From positions 682,001-746,000 of the forward strand of contig JBLDXI010000001.1 in NCBI GenBank assembly GCA_047495785.1: a stretch of DNA of 64,000 nucleotides. The letters run 5' to 3'. The translations under genes were made by a program, and so were the position numbers. A model generated the notes under the pieces. It did no database searches. It saw only the letters and a program-made list of their open reading frames with translations, and had not been told where the DNA came from. This DNA comes from Lepidodermella squamata (Eukaryota > Animalia > Gastrotricha). This document shows, piece by piece, positions 16,202 through 29,334 of the stretch. The first letter of the stretch is position 1, and every line of letters begins with the position of its first letter.

Positions 16202-18224
16202 TTAAAAGCCGTCGGCAAACGATTTCTTCCGGAAGTCAGAATTAGCAAGAATAGTGCCATTTTGTAATACTTGAATAGCCTGAGCAACAGACATAATACT
16301 GTCTTTAAATTTGTACTCAGTTTGATTAACATGGCCGCGTGCAAAAAGAGAGTCAAGGATAACTTTAGGCATTTGCGGCTCGTAATAAAGCTTCTCCGGA
16401 ATGAGTTGGTGATGCAGCCTGGTCGCATCGATTGCTTGCTTTGGGTTCTCTTGGAACCAAATAACTCGGGTGGCAACGTAGGCAGTACCGGATGTAATAC
16501 GAGATCCACCGGCGGCCCCGACAATAAGACTAGCATAGTAAGTATTAGGCTCAGTGGAGTTCACAACCTGTCGCAGGAATATCGACGGACACATTGAAGA
16601 CTGCGGCCGTTTACCAGGTTTTATAAAATTTTGCGGACTTGGCGGCAAATTGAAATAATTGGTCTTGTTTGGCGTCGAAAAATCATCCATTTCGTCATTA
16701 AAAATAATACCAGTCCGTTTTCCAATAATACCACTTCCGAAGTAAACATTGATAGTGGAAGTTACAGAAACCGCGTTGCCTTCCACGTCAATAACCGAAA
16801 TATGGGAAGTGCCGTGATTGCTGGCGTAAGTAGGGTCAGGTTTGTAGAACGCGGTCGGGTGAGTAAATTCATCGGAAATTCGCGATCGAAGAGCATCAGC
16901 GTATGGCTGTGATGTCAAATTCGCGATAAGTTCAGCCATGCCGGGGACAAAACTTTCATCGCCCAGCAATAATCGCCTGCCGTATCCGAACTTCAAGGCT
17001 TCGACAAATCGATGGTAAGTCGTCGTATTCTGGCTATCTTCTTTTGTTAAATTGTATCCCTAAATAAAGAAATTCGATAATACAAGAAATCGATCGCAGA
17101 AATTGACTCTTACCGAGAGGATATTCATAACTAACGCTAAAATTGCACCCGAACCAGGCGGAGGGACACTTAGCATTCTATACTGATTTTGAATAACCGT
17201 TTCAAGAGGCTTTCTCCAAATGACTTGATACGAGGCAAAATCGGAGGCACTGATCGGCGAGCCGATATCGTTTAAATCAGAAATTATGTCCTTTGCAATC
17301 GAGCCATTATAGAATGAGGCAGCGCCTTCTTTTGCGATGCGGGATAAAGTGGCAGCAAGAGCAGGGCATTTTATAACATCGCCTTGTCGCAGAGGTTTGC
17401 CCGAGGTGACGTTGGTAAGAAAATTTCTGCAAATAATCCAGAATTACATGAATATTAATCGCAAAAAGAATAATAGCTCACATTGTGTTCGCGTAAGGCC
17501 TTTTATCATCAGCAGCGTCAATTTTGCCCAGAATTTGGTCAATCGCCGACTCAAGGACTTCCGATATCTCAATTCCTTTGATACATAAATCAATCGTGGG
17601 CTGGAACAGGGTTTCCCAGGGAAGTTTTCCGAAACGCTGATGCGCCGCCCAGTAGCCGGCAACCTCGCTCGGGACGGCGATTGACAGAGGTCCCATAACC
17701 GATGAAATGTTGGCGAACATGTTTTCAGTCGCGAAAAGCGGAGCGATTTCTCTAGCGTCCAGTGCGTACGCGGTTTGTGTTTTCTGATGCCAGATTGTCA
17801 TGAGAAAACCACCACCGATGCCGGCATTGTGCATGTTGAAAGTAGAGCCGGAGCATACCATCGCAGCAATCGCCGCGTCAACCGCCGATCCGCCCATCGC
17901 CAGCATTTTTGTTCCGATTTGCGAACAAGGACCCGCATCTGCGGCAACAGATGCGAAGCGATAAACGCCGAGTGGAGAACTTGAAACCGGGAATACAATT
18001 CCATTGGATGCCGGTGCTGGTGCAGAATTTTGAGTCACATACATAACAATAACGACAGGAATACCGATAAGGAGGACTAACACTGCGATTGCTATCACAA
18101 GCTTCCAGTTCGGCTTAGCGTTTTTCCGACTAGAAAAATAAAATGTCCCCTTTTGGGGCGAATTCGAGTGGCCATTGGTCAGGTCGAGCCGATCGGTCTC
18201 CGTAGCCACAGCCGTCTGATCCAT
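16202..18224 (-). CDS. GGT: Gamma-glutamyltranspeptidase copy D (canonical, 637 aa, type II membrane). Exons 18224-17482, 17426-17114, 17059-16202
   Basis: N-terminal TM helix; GGSAVDAAIA; GIGGG; DARE; catalytic Thr in HGTSHISVID; TSTIN; NDEMDDF; PGKRPQSSM; GAAGGSRI; C-terminal SDFRK..DGF. Confidence 0.95.
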
Positions 18225-18553
18225 GTCCAAAGTTATATTAAATCCCTAGAATCAAAATAGCCACATGAAACACAATGAGGTTCACTTGCATTGATTGCCA
18301 GACTTTCCAGCAAAAATATGCTGGACATTAACAAAAGCCGTCGAAAAATAAAATAAACAAATAGATTCGGTGAAACAGATATCACAAATACACATAAGTT
18401 TGATAAAATGCTTCCAATTGATTCGGTAGACAACAAAGATTGTTAAATGCACAACGCATATAGTGAGATAGATCACGATAAAAATATTATGATTGAGACA
18501 CAGGCAGCATTGATCGTTATGAAGCAGTCTTATTATTTGATTCCCATATAATA

Positions 18554-20954
18554 TCAAAAACCATCAGCATACAAGCCCGGCTTTCGTTGGTCAGCAAAAC
18601 TTATGATTTTTCCATCATCGAGTCGCTGTATGCCCTGCGCAACAGTGCGTTGAAAGTAAAGGCTCTCAGTTAAATTAACATGGCCGTGGCTGCGCAAGAA
18701 ATCCAACAGCCCCTCCGGAACGCCTTTTTCGTACAAAATCCTCTCGGGAGAGCGTTGCGGGTGAAGACGCGGAGCTTCGATTGCCTATAGAACGCAATTG
18801 CTGACTCAATAATTTACTGTTTACAGCGCACCTAACGTACCTGCTTGATATTCTCCCCCATCAGTAAGACTCGCGCGGCTATCGAAGCGACCGCGGATGT
18901 GATGCGCGAGCCGCCTGCCGCGCCTATGACCATGCGCACGCTTTTGTCGCCGGCGCTTGAATTATTGATGAATATCGCAGGACACATGGCAGACAACGGA
19001 CGCTTTCCAGGCCTGTACAAATGAGTCGACAATAAAACACTTAAATTCAACAAAACCGCATCACTTTTAACTAGAAATGGCGACATGAGACAATAATGCT
19101 ATCTTGATATCAACAAAAGGGCGCGGCTGCTAAAGGCGCTCTTATCAAGCCACGGAGGTTTTGAGGTCGAAGAGATAACCCGCGATGAACTTTGATTCAT
19201 CCATATTACCGTCCGTGGGATAAGAACTTGGTTGCCCTCAATTTTCCTAGTTTTCTAAAAAAAGACATCACCGAAAAACTCACTGAATGAGGTTAGCCAT
19301 ATTAACAGGTCCTCCACTTCCGACACTCGACGGCGACGTAAAATCATCAAGTTCGTTGTTGAAAAATATTCCTGTTCGTTTACCCATAATGCCACTACCA
19401 AATCTAAGAAGAAAATGCATCGAAAATCAATGGTTGTCCGAAACTATAGCGCAGAATTTTTACATCATATTAATTGTTGAAGTGACCGATACAGCGGATC
19501 CATCGGCAGCAAGAACTGAAACATGCGCGGTGCCATAGTCTTTGGGTTTGTCAAAAACAGCAGGGTCATAGAAGGAGATCGGATGAGTTGATGAGTCATT
19601 GATCCACATTCGAGTTTTCTTGCCAATATCAGCTGAGGTCAATTCGGCTAACAATCGCTTGAGTGTGTCCTTGTCAGGCATAAAATCTTCGTCACCCATC
19701 AGCAGCTTCTTGCCGTTAGCAAATTTTACAGCCTCAATAATTCGATGAAAAGTGAGAGGCTGTTCGCCGTCAGATCGGCGGAAATCGAAGGCTTGTAATA
19801 TGTTCAAAACATAGCTAAGGAGAGCCCCAGCGCCTGGTGGGCGAGTTGTATACATTCTGAGGCCGCTTTTCAAATCATTCACCAGAGGAGCCCGCCAGAT
19901 CGGCTTGTAAGACGCCAAATCTTCCTTCGTTATCGGCGCGCCGAACTCTTGCAAATCAGCTACAATGTCGTCAGCTGAAAAAATATTTCTTAAAAAATTG
20001 TGTCTGTATTAAGAAGCGTAATTTACCCAAAGTTCCGTTATAAAAGTCTGAACTGCCATTAACAGCTATTCGCTCCAGCGTTTTACCAAGTTCAGGGCAG
20101 TATATTGTTTCCCCAGCCTGATAAAGGAGCCCAGTTTTCGGGTTGATAATATAACTTCGCAATCGATCGTAGAATGAGTCGGTATATCTGGCTAGGAATT
20201 GCCTTGACATTCCACCGATGCTTTCAGCAAACGCCGGCGTCGCTTTGAATCCATTGATACACATATCTATCGAAGGCTTGAACAATGAGTACCAAGACAA
20301 TCGGCCGAAACGTTTATGAGCCGCAAATAGACCAGCCACTTCGCCCGGAACGCCCACTGAAAAAGGTCCGCGGGTCAGTAGGCCCCCTTTTGAGGTCATC
20401 AATTCGATAGAGAAGCCCAGTGGAGCGGTTTCTCTTGCATCCAATGTGTAGGCCTGTTGAGAGGGAGCATCCCATATCACCATGTGAAAACCACCGCCGA
20501 TTCCAGCACTTTGCGGGTGGATAACAAAGCCGCAGATCAATGAAGAAATCGCGGCGTCAAGGGCAGAGCCTCCCCTAGCTAGAGTTGCTGTGCCGATTTC
20601 CGAACAGATTCCCCCATCAGCAGCAACTGAGGCAAAACGATATTTGACTGTTTCTGGCGACGTTGATTTGATGAGCAGAGGTGCTTTAGGTTTCGGAGCT
20701 GTTAAATACGAAATTAGCAGAGCCAGACCGAATATTATGGCCAAAAGGATAAGCCCGATCAGTGAGCGATAATCCGGCTTGTACCACGGCGTTTTATAGT
20801 GAACTGCCGCTTGCTTTTGAATACCCACAAAAGGCCGAGGGGATGAACCCTGCTCCGGCACGTGCAGGCGACTTCTATCAACACTTCCAGCAGTTCCACT
20901 CGCCCTAACTAGTAAATCGACGATGTCATCGTTCCGTTCAATGGCTTCAGCCAT
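18554..20954 (-). CDS. GGT: Gamma-glutamyltranspeptidase copy C (653 aa). Exons 20954-20027, 19974-19464, 19403-19284, 19012-18841, 18784-18554
   Basis: TM helix, DARETAP, YGTAHVSV (Thr kept), NNELDDF, PGKRPLSAM, GAAGGSRI, ADQRK..DGF. Four frame-preserving GT-AG introns. Confidence 0.93.
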
Positions 20955-21136: not shown

Positions 21137-22329
21137 TTAAAATCCGTCAGGGCTGCCAGTGGACTTCCGGAAGTCGCATACAGCTAACAACGAACGATTT
21201 TCAAGACGCTGAATCGCTTGAACAACAGATCGACCGCGCCAGTCAATGATCGTTAAATTTTGCTGCTGAAACTGTGTATGGGCTCGAAGCCATCCCAACA
21301 ACCAGTCTGTTACTCCCCGCTCATAAAATAGGGTGCCCACGTGGAAATGAAGCCTGGCTTTATCGACAGCCTGTTTGAAAATATCATACAGTGTATTTAA
21401 AAATCAAAAGAAGTAAATACGAAATTTACCTCATTGAGTTTCTCTCCGAGCCATAAGTCAACGCTGAGTGGAGTTTCGTCAAGCACAGCCTGATATGACC
21501 TCAAGTCTTCCTCATTGATTGGAACGCCTAAATCTGCAAAATCTTGCAAGATCTGCTCGGCAATACTTCCACGGTAAAATTCTGGCGCACCGTTAGCAGC
21601 GATTTCCCTGAAAGTTGCGGCGAGTTGTTTACAAAAAAATTTATCTCTAGCTTTGTAATATCCATTAGATTGTCTATTTGTGAGCAACTCTTTTAAAGGA
21701 GTGAATTCAGAAGCATTCGTGGCGAAATTTTTGAAGAAATCGACGCCTTCCTCCAGTACCGAGCTGACCTCGAAGCCATTTTCGCACAAATCGATTGAAG
21801 GAGTAAACAAATCAGTCCAATTTAAACGACCGTACTTTCTGTGAGCTTCCCAGATTGCTGCCAGTGTTCCGGGAACACCGATTGAAAATGGTCCCATTTT
21901 AAGGTCGTTCGGATGATTCAATAAATCGGAGTTTGATCCACGTGGAGCTACGCTTTGTCCGTCAATTGAAACGGCTTTCTTAAGTTTATTGTCCCAGATG
22001 ATCATGAAGAGACCACCTCCAACGCCAGCGCTGTGCATGTTCAACACGCTCGAGCATAGCAGAGCAGCGATTCCCGCATCAACAGCCGAGCCGTTTCTCC
22101 GCAGCATATCGGTACCAATTTGTGAACATAAGGCCGAATCTGCAGCAACGGCAGCAGTCTTATACAGTCCGTGAGGCGATTGAGGCAGATATTCTGAAAC
22201 CGGCGAATATTCGGGTATCACGACGTAAAGGCTGAAAATTGCACCAGCAACAAAACATCCGAGAAAAAGCGTTAGGGCGGATGCTTGTTTCGCAAATCGA
22301 TTACCCGCAGTTTGACTTGAATCCGGCAT
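21137..22329 (-). CDS. GGT-like copy B, internally deleted (377 aa, catalytic core absent). Exons 22329-21430, 21370-21137
   Basis: Large-subunit motifs (GSAVDAGIA, GVGGG, VPGT, FYRG) run via 'TPLSVD/LWLGEKLNE|AVDKARLH' straight into the small-subunit C-terminus. No T-S/A-H catalytic motif, TIN, PGKRP or GG motif. ORF and 59-nt intron are intact. Confidence 0.85.
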
Positions 22330-22549
22330 AGCATAATACTTTAACGCCTCTAAACGATAAAAAATTAAGATGGACTAGTTATGGCGGTGTATAAATAAAA
22401 TCATCAAGCTTTCGTTGGAAGAAGCGGTTGAACAACAATTGCGAATCACAGTCGAAGCATTATTGCATTTTGCACCAACAAACGAATGTAAAAGACAAAA
22501 ATTAATCACCAAACAAAAGCTTCAGTGAGAGCATTGTATCTAGAGAATC

Positions 22550-24501
22550 TCAATAGCCAGCTGTGAAGCCACCTCCTTTACGAAAATCGGCTATGGCAAG
22601 TAAAGTGCCGTTATCAAGTCGTTGAATAGCCTGAGATATCGACGAGCGTGGTGTTGTATAAGCTTTTTGCGCAATGTGACCCTTTTGTTTCAGATATTCT
22701 AACATCCATTTTGGCCATGATGGTTCATAGTAGAGAATATCAGGAATTAAGGTCCCGCTAAATCTGAATGCATCGACAGCTTGTTTCACTGTTTCTTTGA
22801 ACCAAAGTGTTCGGTAGGCTACGTATGGCACTGTCGATACGATTCTATTACCACCACTTGCGCCAACAACGAGTCGAACAACGTCGTTTTCGACGAAAAG
22901 CATCGGCGAAATAGTGGTCATCGGTCTTTTACCCGGGCTTATAAAATTGTGAGGTGGCAATGGCAAAGCATCTGACGACGTTTTGTTTATAAAGAAATTC
23001 GACATCCCGTTATTGAAAATAATTCCAGTCCGTTTGCCCATGACAAAGGATCCAAAACTAGACGGCAAAATAACATAGTCTCCTAATCAAAAAAGGTAAC
23101 TCCAAAAACTCACTGTCCATTTATCGTAGATGTGAGCGAAACCGCGTTTCCTAGTTCGTCAATCACAGAAATATGAGAAGTACTGTGATGGATGTTTTTC
23201 TCCTCAAATAATGGTGGAGTTCCGTAGGTTCCATAATCCTCGATTGGAAGAACATAGGAATCATTTATTTTCTGCCGCACGTAGTTTCCCATTTCTGATG
23301 ACGTTATATTGGCAAGACGTTCGTCCAATTCAGTCTCGTTCAAGAAAGAAATATCTCCGAAATAAGACCACTGACCCCAAGCAAATTTCAACGCTTCGAG
23401 GTAACGATGGTAATTCAAAGGATCTTGACTAGATTTTGAGTCCCAATTATATCCGGCAAGAATATTGAGCAGAAAAGCTCCTGCAGCTCCACTGGAAGAC
23501 GGTTTCGGTGTCATCAGTTTCAGATTACCATTTACTCTCATTTCCACTGGCCTTCGGGAATGAACAACGTAAGAACTCAGGTCCGCTTTTGTAATTTTGA
23601 CGCCGACCTCCTCAAGATCGCTAATAATCAATTCAGCCAATTCTCCAGAATAAAAATCCTCCGGGCCATTATTAGCAATCATTTCCAGGGTTTTGGCCAA
23701 CTGCGGGCATTTGATATATTCGCCCTCCTTGTACCAAGTTCCGGTTTCCGGATTGGTAAGAAATTCGACTAAAATAGCCATTTCTGGCTGTTTAGTGGCA
23801 TTAGCCTTCTTCGCTACGAAAGCGATTCCCTCAATCAAAGCTGGCCCGGCTGAAAATCCATTTTTGCATATCTCGATAGACGGTGAAAATAAATCTCTCC
23901 AAGGAAGTTTTCCATATAGATTATGTAGCTCCCTGTAACCAGCTATCTCGCCAGGGACAAGAACAGATAAGGCCCCTAGCTCCAGAGCATTCGGGTTTTT
24001 GATAAATAAATCGTTCGACATAGCGCTGGGTGAAACTCCGTAAGCGTCGAAAGTGGTCGCGTTTGAGGAGGCATTGTTCCAAATAACGGCGAATACGCCC
24101 CCTCCTATTCCGAGATTGTGCATACTGATAATTCCGTTGCAAATCATAGCCGCAATCGCGGCGTCCACAGCTGATCCTCCTCGTCGAAGCATCTCGTTGC
24201 CAATAATTGAGCAGTTCCCGTTATCGCACGCAACAGCCGCTTTTTCATAAACACCAAGAGGTGAGTTCGAAACAGGAAAATTGATGCCTGGAAAATCAGG
24301 CTGTTTCGACGTCGAGCCGGTTAAGGTGACAATGAGAGCGATAGCAGAGACTATTATAATTAAAATAGCAATCGATGCAACGACAATAAGCCGAGGATAT
24401 TTATGCCAAATCATGTTTGAACGCCGGTACTTAGTCTCATCGAAACCAGGCTCATTCACGGCCATAAATTGTTCGCCGTCATCTTCCGACATTTTCAGCA
24501 T
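22550..24501 (-). CDS. GGT-like copy A (631 aa) with altered gamma-glutamyl pocket. Exons 24501-23114, 23057-22550
   Basis: TM helix, GGSAVDAAIA, HSTSHISVID (Thr kept), TSTIN, GASGG; but DAYG, NNGMSNF and PGKRPMTT replace DARE, NDEMDDF and PGKRPxSS. Confidence 0.92.
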
Positions 24502-24912
24502 GACCACTAGCTTCCTATTATTTGAACTGCATGAAAGCTTTCCGCTGAATAGTAATCATTTATATGGACATACCGTTGTTGTGTATGTCGAGTGCGTGCT
24601 GACCGCCACAGTTCAAATAAGAACGGCGCTGTGACCCTTGGTCGGGCGCGCGCGAAAACCGAGTTCAAGTAACACCCTATTTAAAACGACAAGCATAAAA
24701 TATAACCAAATCAACTCCTTTGCACAAAATAGTTTATAGCGCAAAAGAAAGCAGCCATTGCCACAAAAAATATTACCGATATCATGAACCACCGCGTATA
24801 TTAAAAGAAATCAGCGTAACCAGTGTCTTTGATTACAATCAATCACAAGATAAATATAAGTTCCGTAACTTTTCGTTAAAAGCTGGAATGAATGATGTTA
24901 TAAAAACCCGGT

Positions 24913-27900
24913 TCAAGTCGAACCACTCGATCCGTCATTGCAGAGAAGTTCAATTTCGCGCAGAAGAGCCGCGTGCCGTTCAACCGAGCAACGACTGGCG
25001 CACATCGATGCCTGTTTTCCGAGGCGGTGGTCGGCTAGCAAGCGCGCCAAAGCCGCGGTGGCAACTTCTAAAATTGGGTCTTTTATTCTTGTGTCATCAG
25101 TCGATGCGCTGTCATCATGCGGCTTTCTCTCAGCAGGCTCGGGACTGCTAGGGGTGGAATGCGAGTTGGCGAATGCGTCAAGACCGAAACGTTCGACAAT
25201 GGCTTCAGCTAAACGACCAGCCATGTCAGTCCATCTGAATTGAAGCAATAATTCAACAGCTGATCGATACTGCCCAACCGAAATCAGCAGCAGCACTGCA
25301 AACATGCGTTGCGACGTTGTTTGTGATATAGTGGACGAGGAAGCAACCAGATGTTGAACGAATTTTTTCACCACATCAGTCTGGTGGTGACCGGGTGTTA
25401 GCGTGCACTTCGCTAATCTGATCGAGTCGAGCCAAAATCCGGACGATTGCAAGTAGCGGCAGGCGTCGTAATGAAGCCCGACTAGACATAGCAGATGAAT
25501 ACCGTCAAAAATGTGCCCGTCTGCCAGTAAATTGGTCGCGACCAATTTCAGCGTAGCCGTTCTCGTGTTGTTCGCAGCCGATGCGTCAATAAGACACGCC
25601 CTATATGCAACGCAAAAAAGTCGGATTATTAATAATTTTTGACACGCGCAAGGTAATTAGGGCAAATGTAGGTGCGGAAAGAATGAAAACACCCTGCACT
25701 AAATGGCATGAGATTTAGTGGAGCGAGACCATTGGCAACATTATGGCGTTTTGTAGAATTATACTTCTGTGTGTCGCAATTGGCTTAATTTTGGCCGCAG
25801 AACTATCTATCAAGGAGTCTCGGGAATTGAGCGAATTGGCCAGGGCCCAGATCGACGGTTACATCATACAGAGAACCAGAAATCGGTAATAAAATATCCT
25901 AACCAACTCAGCATCAACTACTTTTTAGTCTCAGGCGACAAGCCAGCAGACCGCTGCCGTGTCACGTCGAGTATGTTACAATCAAGCTAAGCGAGTTGGA
26001 CGTGTTTCATAACCGGAAGCCCATCCCTGCTGAATTGCGAGTACCCTACTGCGCCGGGGCATGTTTACCAGGTAATAGCGTTAACTATATCTCGTATCAG
26101 ATCAGCTTCCATTTGTTTATTGTAACATTATTTTTGGCTGCAGCTTACGCTTTTGATCAACGATCGCATATTATACTACGCTTAGCCGTCGGTAATGGAG
26201 TTGGATGTGTACCTAACAGCGATACACTTCCGCCTCCTCTAAACCAAACCATTTTCAGCTTCAATTCCCTGAGCAGCTCGTTCGACAAGATTGTTATCGA
26301 CAAGTTGCTCATTACTAGCTGCAAATGTGTGGGCTAAAATAATACTGATCACGCTTATGAAGAGGTGGAGGTGGAAAATAAAACCGAATTTGTCTATGCC
26401 TTGGCTATTATTGTTCTATTCAATATCTGAGAGATAACTTACTTTAGCCAATCTTGAATAAATTTAGGGTCAGAAGGCTGAGTTGCCAATAGGGCCGATG
26501 CAGCAGATTCTTGATCGCCATAAGATCCCAAAACATCCGCCAGTCTTCGGCGATGCTGCGGGGTTTCAGCGGTAGAAATTTGTCGACGCAAGCAGTCCAA
26601 AGCATGATTCTTGAAGTCTGAATCATTGCAAGCAAGGCCCATTGACGAGGGTAGGGAGCCTTGCTTGTCTCCCAAATAATATTTCACGGCTAACCAAAAT
26701 CTGTACTCTAAGTCAGCACCCATAATTCGAGCAACCAAAGCGCATCGCTCGGCTTTGTTTTCAGTTTTTTGCAAAAACGGCCAATAAGGCACTAGCCAGG
26801 AAGCAGGCCAGTCGTTGGCGTTTTCATGCTCACTTTGAGCCATCAAGCGATGGGTTGTTGCTAATTTACCTCCATCAGCGACCAAGAAAGGCGAAAGAAG
26901 GTCAGGGCGGCGGATTCGGGCCGAAACGGGGCAGTTATCGAATTGAAAGTCAAAATTTAAAATTCGAATAGCACCAGAAGTCATGGCAAGAACCGGAATT
27001 CCTGGAGCCCAGAAATCGGCATCGATTGCTCGTGAAACAAGACCCCCAGTAGTCGAGGCTTCTGAACGCACTTTCAACGAATTAGTTATTTCGCCGGATT
27101 CAGCATTACACAAATCGCAAGATCCATCCGAATACAACGCTAGAAACATGTAATTTCGGCGACCCGGCGAGAAGACTAGACGCCGAATGGAATTGCCGGA
27201 ATATTTGTTCGTCGAAATGGAAATATAGCGCTTCTCGATTATGTTTTCAACAATTATTTTTCCGTCAAACTCAGCCGCCAAGATGTAGCGACCTTTCCAA
27301 GCCAACGCAGTGACAGCTGAGGAAACATGGACGTCGAAATTAAGTGACTTCTCTTGAGCACTTTTTCCGCTGAATACAAAGCGCAGCAAACGCCCGGATA
27401 CGCTTATGATGATCAGCTCATCGAAATGAGCCAATTGAGGCGGAGGTGCGAGGCTAGGGTCTGACATCGAGGGTGTCGGAGATGATCTAGGATCATCGTT
27501 ATCACTGGCAGAGCGATTTACTCGTCGGCGCGCCCATTGAGCAGATGAAGCCTGAACTGCAAGGGATCTAACAACGTGATGTGTATCCAAGTCCCAGATA
27601 TCAACAGCCCCGGATCCGTAAATGACAACTGCTAAATAGCCTGATGGTGAGCAGTTAATGCTAACAATCGGGCTGCCATCACTCCGAGAACTCTTCAACT
27701 GGTTAACTTTTCCTGATGGCAAAGAAATGACGTATAACTCGTTTTTGACGGTTGAAGTGTTTGTTCCCGGGTCGATAGATTGCGTCACCAAGCTAGGCCC
27801 TCCAATAACTCCGGCGCAAACAAGCCGCTTCGAACCGGCCCAGTCGATTGCAGTGACTGGAAGAGGCGAAACAGCGAAATCATTTTCAAGGCTACCGCTA

Positions 27901-29334
27901 GCTAAGTTTACAATCTGGACGCTTCCATTTTGACAACCAATAGCAACTAGGGGGCGATAGCCAGCCAAATCCCCAGATGCAAACCCAGGCACGATTCGCA
28001 TGCAGCAGATACCGCCACTGTGACCCGAATATAAGCCACTCAGAGCAAATCCAAGGTTGGTCGAATTGATGCGGTTTTGCAAACGCCATAAAAATAAACG
28101 GCCAGAACTCATCAAAACTGCATACTGTCTTTCCCCGACTGGCTCGGGGGCGGCGGCCAAGGGTTTAGCCTGTCTCGGCAACCTCAAGGCATCAGTTTGT
28201 GCAGCCAATACGTACCGAATATTGGAATAACTTTGCATAGTAATCATCTGTGAGGACTGCGACGTGCCGTCTTCGCTCGGGGTTACAGCTTGGCTGTTGT
28301 CTCCAACGACTGCGTTGATTTGCCTGAAGCTAAGTTGACCAGAATCGTGCACTGCAATGAATTCGTTTGCGTAAGTACTGAAGAAAACTTGGAAGAACGT
28401 TGATGCGATCTTTTCCAGCGAAATGCTGCAAACGCTGATGCCAATGTCAATGTCGAATATGAAAATATCGCGAGGGAAGACGAATATTGCGTGATCGCGA
28501 TAATGAGGGTGAAACGAAAACTGAATGCAGTCTTTCAGTGAGCACTGCTCCAAGTCAGCCGACTGTAAGCGTTCGTCTTTGGCAGGAATTAAATACTTTG
28601 GACGAAGAATTTCGCCCCTCTTCGAGTAAACAAAATAAGTAGAGCCAGAATCCTTGGGCTCGTTTTCCACGTCCAAGTTGAAGTAAATAAATAGCGAAGT
28701 AGACCCAATAACTAAAGAGAAAAAATATTCAGAAAATTAGGAGAAATAATAATATGATGCTTACCTGCCAGTTGCAGAGGATTAAGCGGATTTGGTGTGA
28801 CTGATTGAAGAACATCGTTGAATGGCTGTGTCCACAAAGGAGATGCTGTTCTGTCTTTGTAAGACCAGGCAGAAATAACATTGGTGTGAACAACCAATAA
28901 AATATCGTTCTGAGCTGACGGAGTAAGCCAGTGCAGGTCCTTCACACATTTTTTGGCGTCCTGAAAAGAAGCCAACATAGCCCCTTTTACCGCGTCCCAT
29001 ACGACTACAAGACCAGAGTTGTCCGCCGACGCTAGCCACAGATGAGGACGGTCGGATGTATTGTAAGTAACAGACGGTTGCTTCCATACTGTCTTTACGA
29101 CGACAGCTGAATGATTTTCCAAAGATTGCACCAGCTTTACTGATTGCACGTGAACGATATTGACGATGTTCTGACACCCAAAAGCAATAAATCCATGACT
29201 ACCCCTGTATTTCAATTTACCAAGAAAAGTGAATGGAAAAGTGGCAATTTCTCAAATAATTACCATGACAGCGAATTTTTATTGCCAGCTGTACAGTTGC
29301 TGCAAATCGACTTGGGGCTCAATATTGTTTCCAT
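24913..29334 (-). CDS. WDR11: WD repeat protein 11 (1155 aa). Exons 29334-29264, 29204-28765, 28711-26443, 25600-24913
   Basis: N-terminus 'NKNSLSWGSHGFIAFGC', LASAD, FHPHYRD, 'FSPGRRN', C-terminal 'LKACL..LKLVATNLLADG..GIHLLCLVGLHYDACRYLQS', all typical of WDR11. Confidence 0.93.
25743..26337 (+). CDS. Nested secreted TGF-beta/GDNF-superfamily cystine-knot ligand (159 aa). Exons 25743-25885, 25929-26071, 26144-26337
   Basis: Spliced product: MAFCRIILLCVAIGLILAA (signal) ..RTRNRLRR (furin site) QASRPLPCHVEYVTIKLSEL..PYCAGAC..SHIILRL..GCVP..ITSCKCVG*. GT-AG introns of 43 and 72 nt. AATAAA at 26377-26382. Confidence 0.88.

What the first reader, a model, noticed from the sequence alone, without database searches (positions are those of the whole stretch)
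22550..24501. GGT paralogue A keeps the catalytic Thr but has replaced the gamma-glutamyl recognition residues
Seen: the nucleophile (HS-T-SH), TIN and oxyanion GG are intact, but DARE becomes DAYG, NDEMDDF becomes NNGMSNF and SS becomes TT; neighbours C and D keep the canonical residues. Known: in human GGT1, R107, S451 and S452 bind the alpha-carboxylate and E420/D423 bind the alpha-amino group of glutamate. Inference: concerted loss in a full-length, self-cleavable membrane Ntn-hydrolase points to a new acyl substrate (an acylase/amidohydrolase) rather than decay.
Basis: partly seen in the sequence, partly recalled or inferred. Interest (0 to 1): 0.7.

Follow-up and report, generated by a model that had tools for sequence, protein, structure and literature searches.

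The report
Expressed GGT paralogue with neutralised pocket
A small invertebrate carries an expressed, selectively maintained copy of the glutathione-cleaving enzyme GGT that keeps its catalytic machinery but has replaced all five charged residues around the glutamate-binding site with uncharged ones. It therefore probably cuts some other amide, though this has not been tested.

Summary
Gene A (minus strand, 22550-24501) is an intact two-exon, 631-codon type-II membrane GGT (PF01019). HMMER alignment to human GGT1 chains puts every cited residue at the equivalent position: R107>Y, E108>G, E420>G, D422>S, D423>N, S451/S452>T/T. T381, T399, N401 and G473/G474 are kept. Neighbours C and D are canonical and B is truncated.

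The gene is not decaying:
- A transcript-type run contains a contig that skips exactly the predicted 56-nt intron.
- The listed variants give 15 synonymous to 9 non-synonymous changes (pN/pS about 0.18).
- A positional orthologue in a distant metagenomic animal (44% identity, same WDR11-GGT cluster, same intron site and phase) shares Y, G, S, G and N.
- Of 73 near-invariant GGT columns, both orthologues depart at only six, four of them donor-pocket residues.

A new acyl substrate is the best reading but is untested. Laboratory D433N-type mutants of bacterial GGT gain glutaryl-amide acylase activity. A weak gamma-glutamyl hydrolase or a non-enzyme is not excluded.

An exhaustive protein search found no further members of this type. 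Independently remodelled GGT paralogues do exist in amphioxus, in a clam and in bacteria. The scan had already flagged another such paralogue elsewhere in this genome (s1-379859). I rate it a new variant of a known kind, of moderate interest.

The parts
22550..24501 (-). GGT paralogue A, whole CDS with its one intron (631 codons plus stop)
   Evidence: ORFs and reading of the sequence; PF01019 on both exons; transcript contigs over about 22371-24520
23114..24501 (-). Exon 1: cytosolic tail, membrane anchor, large subunit and the first 22 residues of the small subunit (residues 1-462 plus two bases of codon 463)
23058..23113 (-). Intron, 56 nt, GT..AG, phase 2
   Evidence: Run X2 has a contig joint from 23057 to 23114 that skips 56 nt, with CT..AC ends on the + strand. 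The orthologue has an intron at the same site and in the same phase.
22550..23057 (-). Exon 2: rest of the small subunit (residues 463-631) and the stop codon
24322..24390 (-). Single N-terminal membrane anchor (about L38-L60), type II topology as in GGT1
   Evidence: The best Kyte-Doolittle 19-mer is residues 39-57, mean 3.25. It aligns with the human GGT1 anchor.
24037..24042 (-). Y154-G155, in place of R107-E108 (alpha-carboxylate-binding Arg)
   Evidence: the same Y-G is in the orthologue mA
23173..23184 (-). S440-T441-S442-H443: retained Ntn nucleophile Thr (human T381); G380 is replaced by S
23119..23127 (-). T459-I460-N461 (human T399-I-N401), retained
22994..23014 (-). N478-N-G480-M-S482-N483-F484: E420>G, D422>S, D423>N (alpha-amino-binding acids lost)
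22913..22918 (-). T510-T511, in place of S451-S452
22850..22855 (-). G531-G532, the retained oxyanion-hole glycines (G473-G474)
21143..22329 (-). Paralogue B: truncated GGT (R107>Q, E108>S) lacking profile columns 285-507, which include the nucleophile
   Evidence: transcript contigs are present
18557..20954 (-). Paralogue C: canonical pocket apart from S452A; five exons
   Evidence: four spliced joints in X2
16202..18230 (-). Paralogue D: fully canonical GGT
24913..29215 (-). WDR11-like gene directly upstream of A; it serves as the synteny anchor
   Evidence: Pfam WDR11 propeller and TPR domains; the same order is seen in L001 and L002

Best explanation
Gene A encodes a membrane-anchored, glycosylated ecto-protein of the GGT (MEROPS T03) Ntn-hydrolase family. 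It most likely still cleaves itself at Ser440|Thr441 and uses the new N-terminal Thr, Thr459 and the Gly531-Gly532 oxyanion hole to hydrolyse an amide bond.

Its donor pocket has been de-charged. All five charged residues that hold or frame the free alpha-amino-acid head of a gamma-glutamyl group (R107, E108, E420, D422, D423) are neutral in both orthologues. The hydroxyl or amide residues at positions 451 and 452 remain, and so does N401 in the window's copy.

The likeliest consequence is that the enzyme no longer binds glutathione-type gamma-glutamyl donors with normal affinity and has lost transpeptidation. It would act instead as an amidohydrolase or acylase on a substrate whose acyl part lacks the free alpha-ammonium group, such as a glutaryl-like or N-blocked gamma-glutamyl-like acyl group.

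Shown here: gene structure, expression, splicing, residue equivalence, orthology, and constraint on the remodelled site. Inferred: autoprocessing, catalysis, and the nature of the substrate.
For: - Residue equivalence with human GGT1.
- The catalytic set T381, H383, T399, G473 and G474 is retained in wA and in its 44%-identical orthologue mA.
- Orthology rests on four points. The two form a clade with SH-aLRT 95 on a tree built without the trait columns. Both are the first GGT next to WDR11. They share the intron site and phase. They share Y107, G108, S380, G420 and N423.
- Of 73 columns at least 90% conserved in 117 reference GGTs, both orthologues depart at only six: S82, R107, E108, G380, D423 and S451. 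The C pair departs at 1 and the D pair at 2.
- Residues within 5 positions of the pocket are 57% identical between the orthologues, against 42% elsewhere.
- A spliced transcript contig exists, and the listed variants give 15 synonymous to 9 non-synonymous changes, pN/pS about 0.18.
- Literature read (PMC8062742): class IV cephalosporin acylases carry Asn at Ec-D433 (human D423). EcGGT D433N loses transpeptidation, keeps 82% of hydrolysis and gains glutaryl-7-ACA acylase activity. BsGGT E423Y/E442Q/D445N, at the positions equivalent to human 401, 420 and 423 (equal chain offsets), raises that activity 963-fold.
- PMC6949936 gives the roles of R107, N401, E420, D423, S451 and S452 in human GGT1.
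Against: - There is no biochemical or structural datum for this protein or for any animal GGT with such a pocket.
- Loss of the Arg is often crippling: EcGGT R114L and R114D have no detectable activity.
- A protein that needs only autoprocessing for maturation would also keep T381, T399 and the two glycines, so their retention does not prove turnover.
- N401, S451 and S452 are not held fixed between the two orthologues (N/S, T/N, T/S), so the new pocket is not sharply defined.
- The variant list is partial: 40 differences were not shown.
- The RNA nature of run X2 is inferred from its five spliced joints, not from its record.
Confidence: 0.5

Rival explanations
1. A is still a gamma-glutamyl hydrolase (a glutathionase or leukotrienase type), only weaker or hydrolysis-only. 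It would bind the glutamyl head through N461, T510, T511, Y154 and backbone groups.
For: Single substitutions are tolerated in bacterial GGTs: BlGGT R109S keeps 85% activity, and EcGGT D433N keeps 82% of hydrolysis while losing transpeptidation. N401 and two hydroxyl residues at 451 and 452 remain in wA. E420 is the least conserved donor residue among reference GGTs, at 82 of 117.
Against: All five charged pocket residues are lost together in both orthologues. R114L and R114D are inactive, and BsGGT D445N loses 90% of its activity. The orthologue also lacks N401 and S451. Canonical paralogues C and D sit beside A and already cover that function.
Confidence: 0.2
2. A is a pseudoenzyme: a processed, membrane-bound GGT-fold protein kept for binding, scaffolding or partnering with active paralogues. 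On this reading its catalytic residues are retained only because they drive self-cleavage and folding.
For: Retention of T381, T399 and the GG pair is equally required for autoprocessing (review tables). Human GGT2, GGT6 and GGT7 still have no defined substrate (PMC9140057). The residues at 401, 451 and 452 drift between the orthologues. The neighbouring B lineage has lost catalytic parts.
Against: The pocket neighbourhood is still the most conserved part of the protein. The new motifs (F-x-x-YG, FNNGMxNFxIN, STSHISV) are themselves conserved at 44% overall identity. The changes are conservative in shape (D>N, R>Y, S>T) rather than random.
Confidence: 0.22
3. A is a decaying duplicate (a young pseudogene) whose substitutions are neutral.
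For: It lies in a tandem array that contains a truncated copy, B. A evolves faster than D: the end branch is 0.60 against 0.33.
Against: The frame is intact at 631 codons and the transcript is spliced. There is an excess of synonymous variants. The lineage predates the split of two species whose canonical D orthologues are only 58% identical. It keeps 63-64 of 73 near-invariant columns.
Confidence: 0.03

Closest known systems
Human and vertebrate GGT1 (glutathione hydrolase 1; PDB 4GDX, 4GG2)
   Same: It is the best solved match (E 6e-63 for the large part, 4e-22 for the small part). [quoted passage not shown]
   Different: R107, E108, E420, D422 and D423 are all neutralised, S451 and S452 become Thr, and G380 becomes Ser. 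A belongs to a lineage-specific clade, not to the vertebrate GGT1 clade.
Class IV cephalosporin (glutaryl-7-ACA) acylases and engineered GGT mutants (EcGGT D433N; BsGGT E423Y/E442Q/D445N)
   Same: Asn stands at the Asp433/Asp423 position and the E420-equivalent acid is lost. In the laboratory these changes shift a GGT from gamma-glutamyl to des-amino (glutaryl) amides and abolish transpeptidation (PMC8062742).
   Different: Those are bacterial, soluble or periplasmic enzymes, and the Arg was not among the positions altered in the acylase-enhancing mutants. A is an animal membrane protein that has also lost the Arg. The solved bacterial acylase 2NLZ matches far less well than GGT1 (1.8e-24 against 6e-63).
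Other GGT-fold enzymes with non-glutathione substrates: HpxW oxamate amidohydrolase, CapD
   Same: They show that the GGT scaffold and its Thr nucleophile can serve other amides, namely oxamate and poly-gamma-D-glutamate (PMC5270733; PMC8062742). Distant PDB matches 3G9K and 5HFT are present.
   Different: They are only remotely related (E 1e-15 to 1e-16), are prokaryotic, and have different pocket solutions.
Uncharacterised animal GGT paralogues with remodelled pockets (amphioxus P0039 and P0045, clam P0036; human GGT6 and GGT7; paralogue g54b of this genome)
   Same: The phenomenon is the same: the Thr nucleophile is kept while several donor-site residues are replaced. P0039 and P0045 have 7 of 7 replaced and P0036 has 5 of 7. 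g54b has R107G, E108S and D423A (earlier finding s1-379859).
   Different: The replacements are different (Leu, His or Arg rather than Tyr, Gly or Asn) and of independent origin. None carries the Y-G and G-x-x-N signature. None has a known substrate either.

Membership tests
Gamma-glutamyltranspeptidase family (Pfam PF01019, MEROPS T03) | Sequence match to the family profile above the curated cut-off over the whole domain | tested here: met
   Exon 1 scores 325 bits (profile 2-349) and exon 2 scores 133 bits (profile 352-512), against a cut-off of 27.
Gamma-glutamyltranspeptidase family (Pfam PF01019, MEROPS T03) | Ntn nucleophile Thr with T399 and the Gly-Gly oxyanion hole | tested here: met
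   T441, T459 and G531-G532 align with T381, T399 and G473-G474.
Gamma-glutamyltranspeptidase family (Pfam PF01019, MEROPS T03) | Autocatalytic cleavage into a large and a small subunit | not testable with these tools
   Only the required residues can be seen; they are present.
Canonical glutathione hydrolase / gamma-glutamyl transferase (EC 3.4.19.13 / 2.3.2.2; GGT1/GGT5 type) | Gamma-glutamyl donor site: R107, N401, E420, D423, S451, S452 | tested here: not met
   The residues are Y, N, G, N, T, T in wA and Y, S, G, N, N, S in the orthologue. Only N401 is kept, and only in wA.
Canonical glutathione hydrolase / gamma-glutamyl transferase (EC 3.4.19.13 / 2.3.2.2; GGT1/GGT5 type) | Turnover of glutathione or gamma-Glu-pNA | not testable with these tools
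   This needs an enzyme assay.
Class IV cephalosporin / glutaryl-amide acylase | Asn in place of the alpha-amino-binding Asp (Ec D433, human D423) | tested here: met
   N483 in wA and Asn in mA; the criterion comes from PMC8062742.
Class IV cephalosporin / glutaryl-amide acylase | Common descent with the bacterial acylases | tested here: not met
   A nests within a clade of 16 genes from two animal genomes (SH-aLRT 97). 2NLZ matches far less well than human GGT1. Any likeness is convergent.
Class IV cephalosporin / glutaryl-amide acylase | Glutaryl-amide hydrolysis | not testable with these tools
   This needs an enzyme assay.
Vertebrate GGT5 or GGT7 orthologue | Placement in that clade on a tree | tested here: not met
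   The fish GGT5 sequences (P0052, P0091, P0046) form a separate clade with support 100. The genome's own long-branch GGT7-like gene (g7) is a different locus.

The most novel reading that the evidence does not exclude
The A lineage is the first animal GGT-fold ecto-amidase with a true non-gamma-glutamyl specificity, acting on a des-amino or N-blocked acyl amide. It would have evolved by neutralising the whole charged donor site, and it has been kept since before the split of two deeply diverged species of a poorly sampled invertebrate group. It would be a natural counterpart of the laboratory GGT-to-acylase conversions.
Probability: 0.35. Interest if true: 0.65.

Novelty: new variant of a known kind. 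Interest (0 to 1): 0.5.

Why it matters
GGT is a textbook enzyme whose donor site is almost invariant from bacteria to humans. Animal paralogues with rebuilt pockets, including human GGT6 and GGT7, still have no known substrate.

Here the rebuilt pocket is shown to be expressed, under purifying selection, and conserved across a deep species split. Canonical sister genes sit beside it as built-in controls. The changes match positions whose mutation is known to redirect specificity. That makes the gene a clean, cheaply testable entry point for finding a new animal amidase activity and for understanding how the GGT scaffold changes substrate.

If it turns out to be inactive, it would be a well-documented case of a conserved GGT pseudoenzyme.

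Tried and rejected
- **Joined protein.** Exons were searched separately by reference. Structure prediction, structural alignment and complex prediction of the full protein were therefore left out. Inside scripts the two exons were used together for two purposes only. One was numbering codons when classifying variants. The other was placing separately aligned pieces on common profile columns.
- **Close relatives.** The single-protein scan of JGI metagenome contigs found none.
- **Motif-based scan.** The scan with GI[IL]FNNGM brought two canonical eukaryote-like GGTs and 13 bacterial GGT-like loci, but no A-type gene.
- **Exhaustive search.** The profile search of 1.84 billion representatives found no further Y-G / G-x-x-N protein among the best 150. 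The next hits after P0001 are canonical GGTs of molluscs, a brachiopod, an annelid, a sea urchin, a mosquito and a fish.
- **dN/dS between wA and mA.** Not attempted, because at 44% protein identity synonymous sites are saturated.
- **Literature.** A search for venom GGT-like proteins with substituted sites returned nothing. The HpxW structure paper is not held.
- **Organism.** Not identified here. Other agents' notes call the genome 'probably a rotifer'. I did not test this, and no named rotifer protein appeared among the named hits I looked at (ten of the top hits).
- **Decay or pseudogene reading.** Rejected on the grounds given in the rival explanations.

Full report
**Gene model.**
The finding's coordinates are exactly one gene on the minus strand. 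The first ATG after an in-frame stop is at 24501. The frame runs to 23114, where a GTGAGT donor follows two bases of a codon. An acceptor TAG ends at 23058. The frame resumes at 23057 (CA|T = His463) and runs to the stop at 22552-22550. That gives 631 codons in two exons with one 56-nt phase-2 intron.

Both exons match Pfam PF01019: exon 1 covers profile positions 2-349 at 325 bits, and exon 2 covers 352-512 at 133 bits. Residues 38-60 form one very hydrophobic helix (mean Kyte-Doolittle 3.25). Nine N-x-S/T sequons follow it. This fits a type-II glycosylated ecto-protein like GGT1.

**Check of the observation.**
phmmer alignments of the two exons to the heavy and light chains of human GGT1 (4GDX, 4GG2) have no gaps at or next to any cited motif.

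| Human GGT1 | Gene A (wA) |
|---|---|
| R107-E108 | Y154-G155 |
| G380-T381 | S440-T441 |
| T399 / N401 | T459 / N461 |
| E420 / D422 / D423 | G480 / S482 / N483 |
| S451 / S452 | T510 / T511 |
| G473 / G474 | G531 / G532 |

A second, independent mapping used a profile I built from 97 canonical eukaryotic GGTs, and it gives the same table. The window holds three more tandem copies. D (16202-18230) is fully canonical. C (18557-20954) is canonical apart from S452A. B (21143-22329) has R107Q and E108S and lacks profile columns 285-507, including the nucleophile.

R107, S451, S452 and N401 hydrogen-bond the alpha-carboxyl and alpha-amino groups. E420 forms a salt bridge with the alpha-amino group. 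D423 pairs with R107 (PMC6949936).

**Is the gene alive?**
One of the public runs that hold this stretch (X2) behaves like a transcriptome. Its contigs skip exactly 23058-23113 in A and four GT..AG introns in C, whereas the DNA-like run X1 shows no joints. X2 contigs lie over about 22371-24520, with nothing in the last bin, 24521-24700. So A is transcribed and spliced as predicted.

The 24 differences that the tool listed inside the CDS are strain or allele differences in X1 and X2. They split into 15 synonymous and 9 non-synonymous changes. With 434 synonymous and 1459 non-synonymous sites, that gives pN/pS of about 0.18. The list was truncated by the tool, so this is a sample. It is not chosen by codon position.

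**A deep orthologue.**
The best database match by far is P0001, at 41% identity over exon 1 and 325 bits, against 273 bits or less for everything else. It is a prokaryote-style gene call on two eukaryotic contigs from ENA metagenome assemblies (L001, L002).

- **Synteny.** The gene order there is Ras, WDR11, a TGF-beta-like ORF, then five GGT genes. P0001 is the first GGT after WDR11, just as A is in the window.
- **Intron.** Its translation reads through a 72-nt in-frame intron that sits at the same codon and in the same phase as A's intron.
- **Tree.** The tree covered 53 GGTs and left out all 18 tabulated active-site and motif columns. On it wA and mA form a clade (SH-aLRT 95), as do the B pair (99) and the C pair (99). 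All 16 non-GGT7-like genes of the two genomes form one lineage-specific clade (97).
- **Age of the split.** Positional orthologues are 44% (A), 43% (B), 50% (C) and 58% (D) identical. The two species are therefore old relatives, and A already existed in their common ancestor.
- **Shared substitutions.** mA carries Y107, G108, S380, G420 and N423 like wA. It has N at 422, N/S at 451/452 and S at 401.

**The changes are targeted.**
Among 73 profile columns that are at least 90% conserved in 117 reference GGTs, wA differs at 9 and mA at 10. They differ together at only six: S82, R107, E108, G380, D423 and S451. The C pair shares 1 such departure and the D pair 2. E420 is less conserved in the references (82 of 117), so it is not in that set. 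It is Gly in both A orthologues.

Residues within five positions of the pocket residues are 57% identical between wA and mA, against 42% for the rest. C shows the same gradient (71 against 47), and so does D (78 against 55). The new motifs are themselves conserved: F-[DN]-x-Y-G, S-T-S-H-I-S-V and G-I-[IL]-F-N-N-G-M-x-N-F-x-I-N. A evolves about as fast as C, which keeps a canonical pocket (end branches 0.60 and 0.65). General divergence therefore does not explain the pocket changes.

In plain terms, the fold and the catalytic centre are held, and all five charged residues around the glutamyl head group have been replaced by neutral ones in both species.

**How it most likely works.**
The retained Thr441, Thr459, His443 and Gly531-Gly532 are the set needed both for self-cleavage and for acyl-enzyme catalysis in this family (PMC8062742; PMC9140057). 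Mutagenesis of bacterial GGTs shows what the replaced residues do (PMC8062742):

- The Arg recognises the alpha-carboxylate. EcGGT R114L and R114D are inactive, and BlGGT R109L and R109M keep about 5% of hydrolysis only.
- EcGGT D433N (human D423) abolishes transpeptidation, keeps 82% of hydrolysis and creates glutaryl-7-ACA acylase activity.
- Class IV cephalosporin acylases naturally carry Asn at that position.
- The BsGGT triple mutant E423Y/E442Q/D445N raises acylase activity 963-fold.

The human and B. subtilis small chains both align to exon 2 from chain residue 24. Those three Bs positions therefore correspond to human 401, 420 and 423. Two of them (420 and 423) are the ones A has neutralised.

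My best reading (confidence 0.5) is a self-processing Thr-Ntn amidohydrolase that has given up the zwitterionic gamma-glutamyl head group. It would act on an acyl amide without a free alpha-ammonium group (glutaryl-like or N-blocked) and would have little or no transpeptidase activity. Which substrate it uses cannot be read from the sequence.

**Rivals.**
- **A weak or hydrolysis-only gamma-glutamyl hydrolase (0.2).** This is possible because single changes are tolerated, N461 remains, and Thr hydroxyls sit at 510 and 511. The concerted loss of all five charges argues against it, as do the further loss of N401 and S451 in mA and the presence of canonical C and D next door.
- **A processed pseudoenzyme (0.22).** This is not excluded. 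Autoprocessing alone would preserve the catalytic residues, positions 401, 451 and 452 drift between the orthologues, and human GGT2, GGT6 and GGT7 remain without substrates.
- **Neutral decay (0.03).** This is contradicted by expression, splicing, polymorphism, orthology and conservation.

**How new is it?**
An exhaustive profile search of 1.84 billion cluster representatives found 20,718 relatives. Among the best 150, no protein besides P0001 has the A signature. The next hits are canonical GGTs of diverse animals. A motif-based scan of JGI metagenomes found only bacterial GGT-like genes with FNNGM. In these, R107 becomes G, I or N, and D423 becomes W, Y or K.

The general phenomenon is not unique, however:
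- Amphioxus P0039 and P0045 have all 7 donor positions replaced, and a clam protein (P0036) has 5 of 7.
- Further cases appear.
- This genome has about 13 GGT loci. These include g54b (R107G, E108S, D423A), g54d (E420Q) and a GGT7-like gene.
- g54b is evidently the paralogue already reported by this scan as s1-379859.
- Bacterial precedents for the GGT fold acting on other amides exist: CapD, HpxW and class IV acylases.

I therefore class A as a new variant of a known kind. It is a distinct, conserved, expressed pocket design in an animal GGT. Its function is unknown but testable.

**Limits.**
- The organism was not identified. Other agents' notes suggest a rotifer, which I did not test.
- The RNA nature of X2 rests on its spliced joints.
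- The variant list is partial.
- The tree support is SH-aLRT from a quick search.
- No structure of the joined protein was computed.

Noticed in passing
window 21143-22329 (-): Paralogue B is a truncated GGT. It has R107Q and E108S, and profile columns 285-507 (nucleophile and most of the small subunit) are missing, with only about 65 nt between the two remaining parts. It is still covered by transcript-type contigs. Those contigs have loose ends at 21372, 21429, 21455 and 21491, so the other strain or species may carry a different, perhaps longer, B. The orthologue mB (L001 12151-13768) keeps S-T-x-H, T-T and GG but has E420A, D422G and D423K.
   Followed up: partly
L006:998-3144 (G000 contig C54, about 1570998-1573144): Another paralogue, the middle one of three neighbouring genes, has R107G, E108S and D423A with the rest canonical. 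This is evidently the gene of earlier finding s1-379859. Pocket remodelling has therefore happened more than once in this genome.
   Followed up: partly
G000: C1, C7, C17, C20, C24, C54 (L003-L010): The genome has about 13 GGT-family loci. Together with the five genes of the metagenomic relative, all but one (a long-branch GGT7-like gene, L009, with E420T, D422E and S452A) fall in one lineage-specific clade. L007 has E420Q. L010 holds only degenerate GGT fragments.
   Followed up: partly
L001:10001-11953 (protein P0001): The database protein P0001 is a prokaryote-style call on a eukaryotic metagenome contig. It reads through a 72-nt in-frame intron (GTATGA...TTCAG), which adds 24 spurious residues at the site where A has its intron.
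   Followed up: yes
The window ORF 25996-26337 itself gave no Pfam hit at E<=0.001.
   Followed up: no
L013-L025 (JGI metagenome contigs): Bacterial GGT-like genes share the FNNGM motif (E420G) with other pocket solutions: R107 becomes G, I or N; D423 becomes W, Y or K; S451/S452 become S/N, A/N, F/V or N/N. The Thr nucleophile and GG are kept. L022 carries three such genes in tandem.
   Followed up: no
P0039, P0045 (Branchiostoma floridae), P0036 (Mercenaria mercenaria), P0215, P0252: Other animal proteins auto-annotated as 'glutathione hydrolase 1 proenzyme-like' have 5-7 of 7 donor-site residues replaced while keeping the Thr nucleophile. They are independent cases of the same phenomenon and are likely mis-named as glutathione hydrolases.
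   Followed up: no
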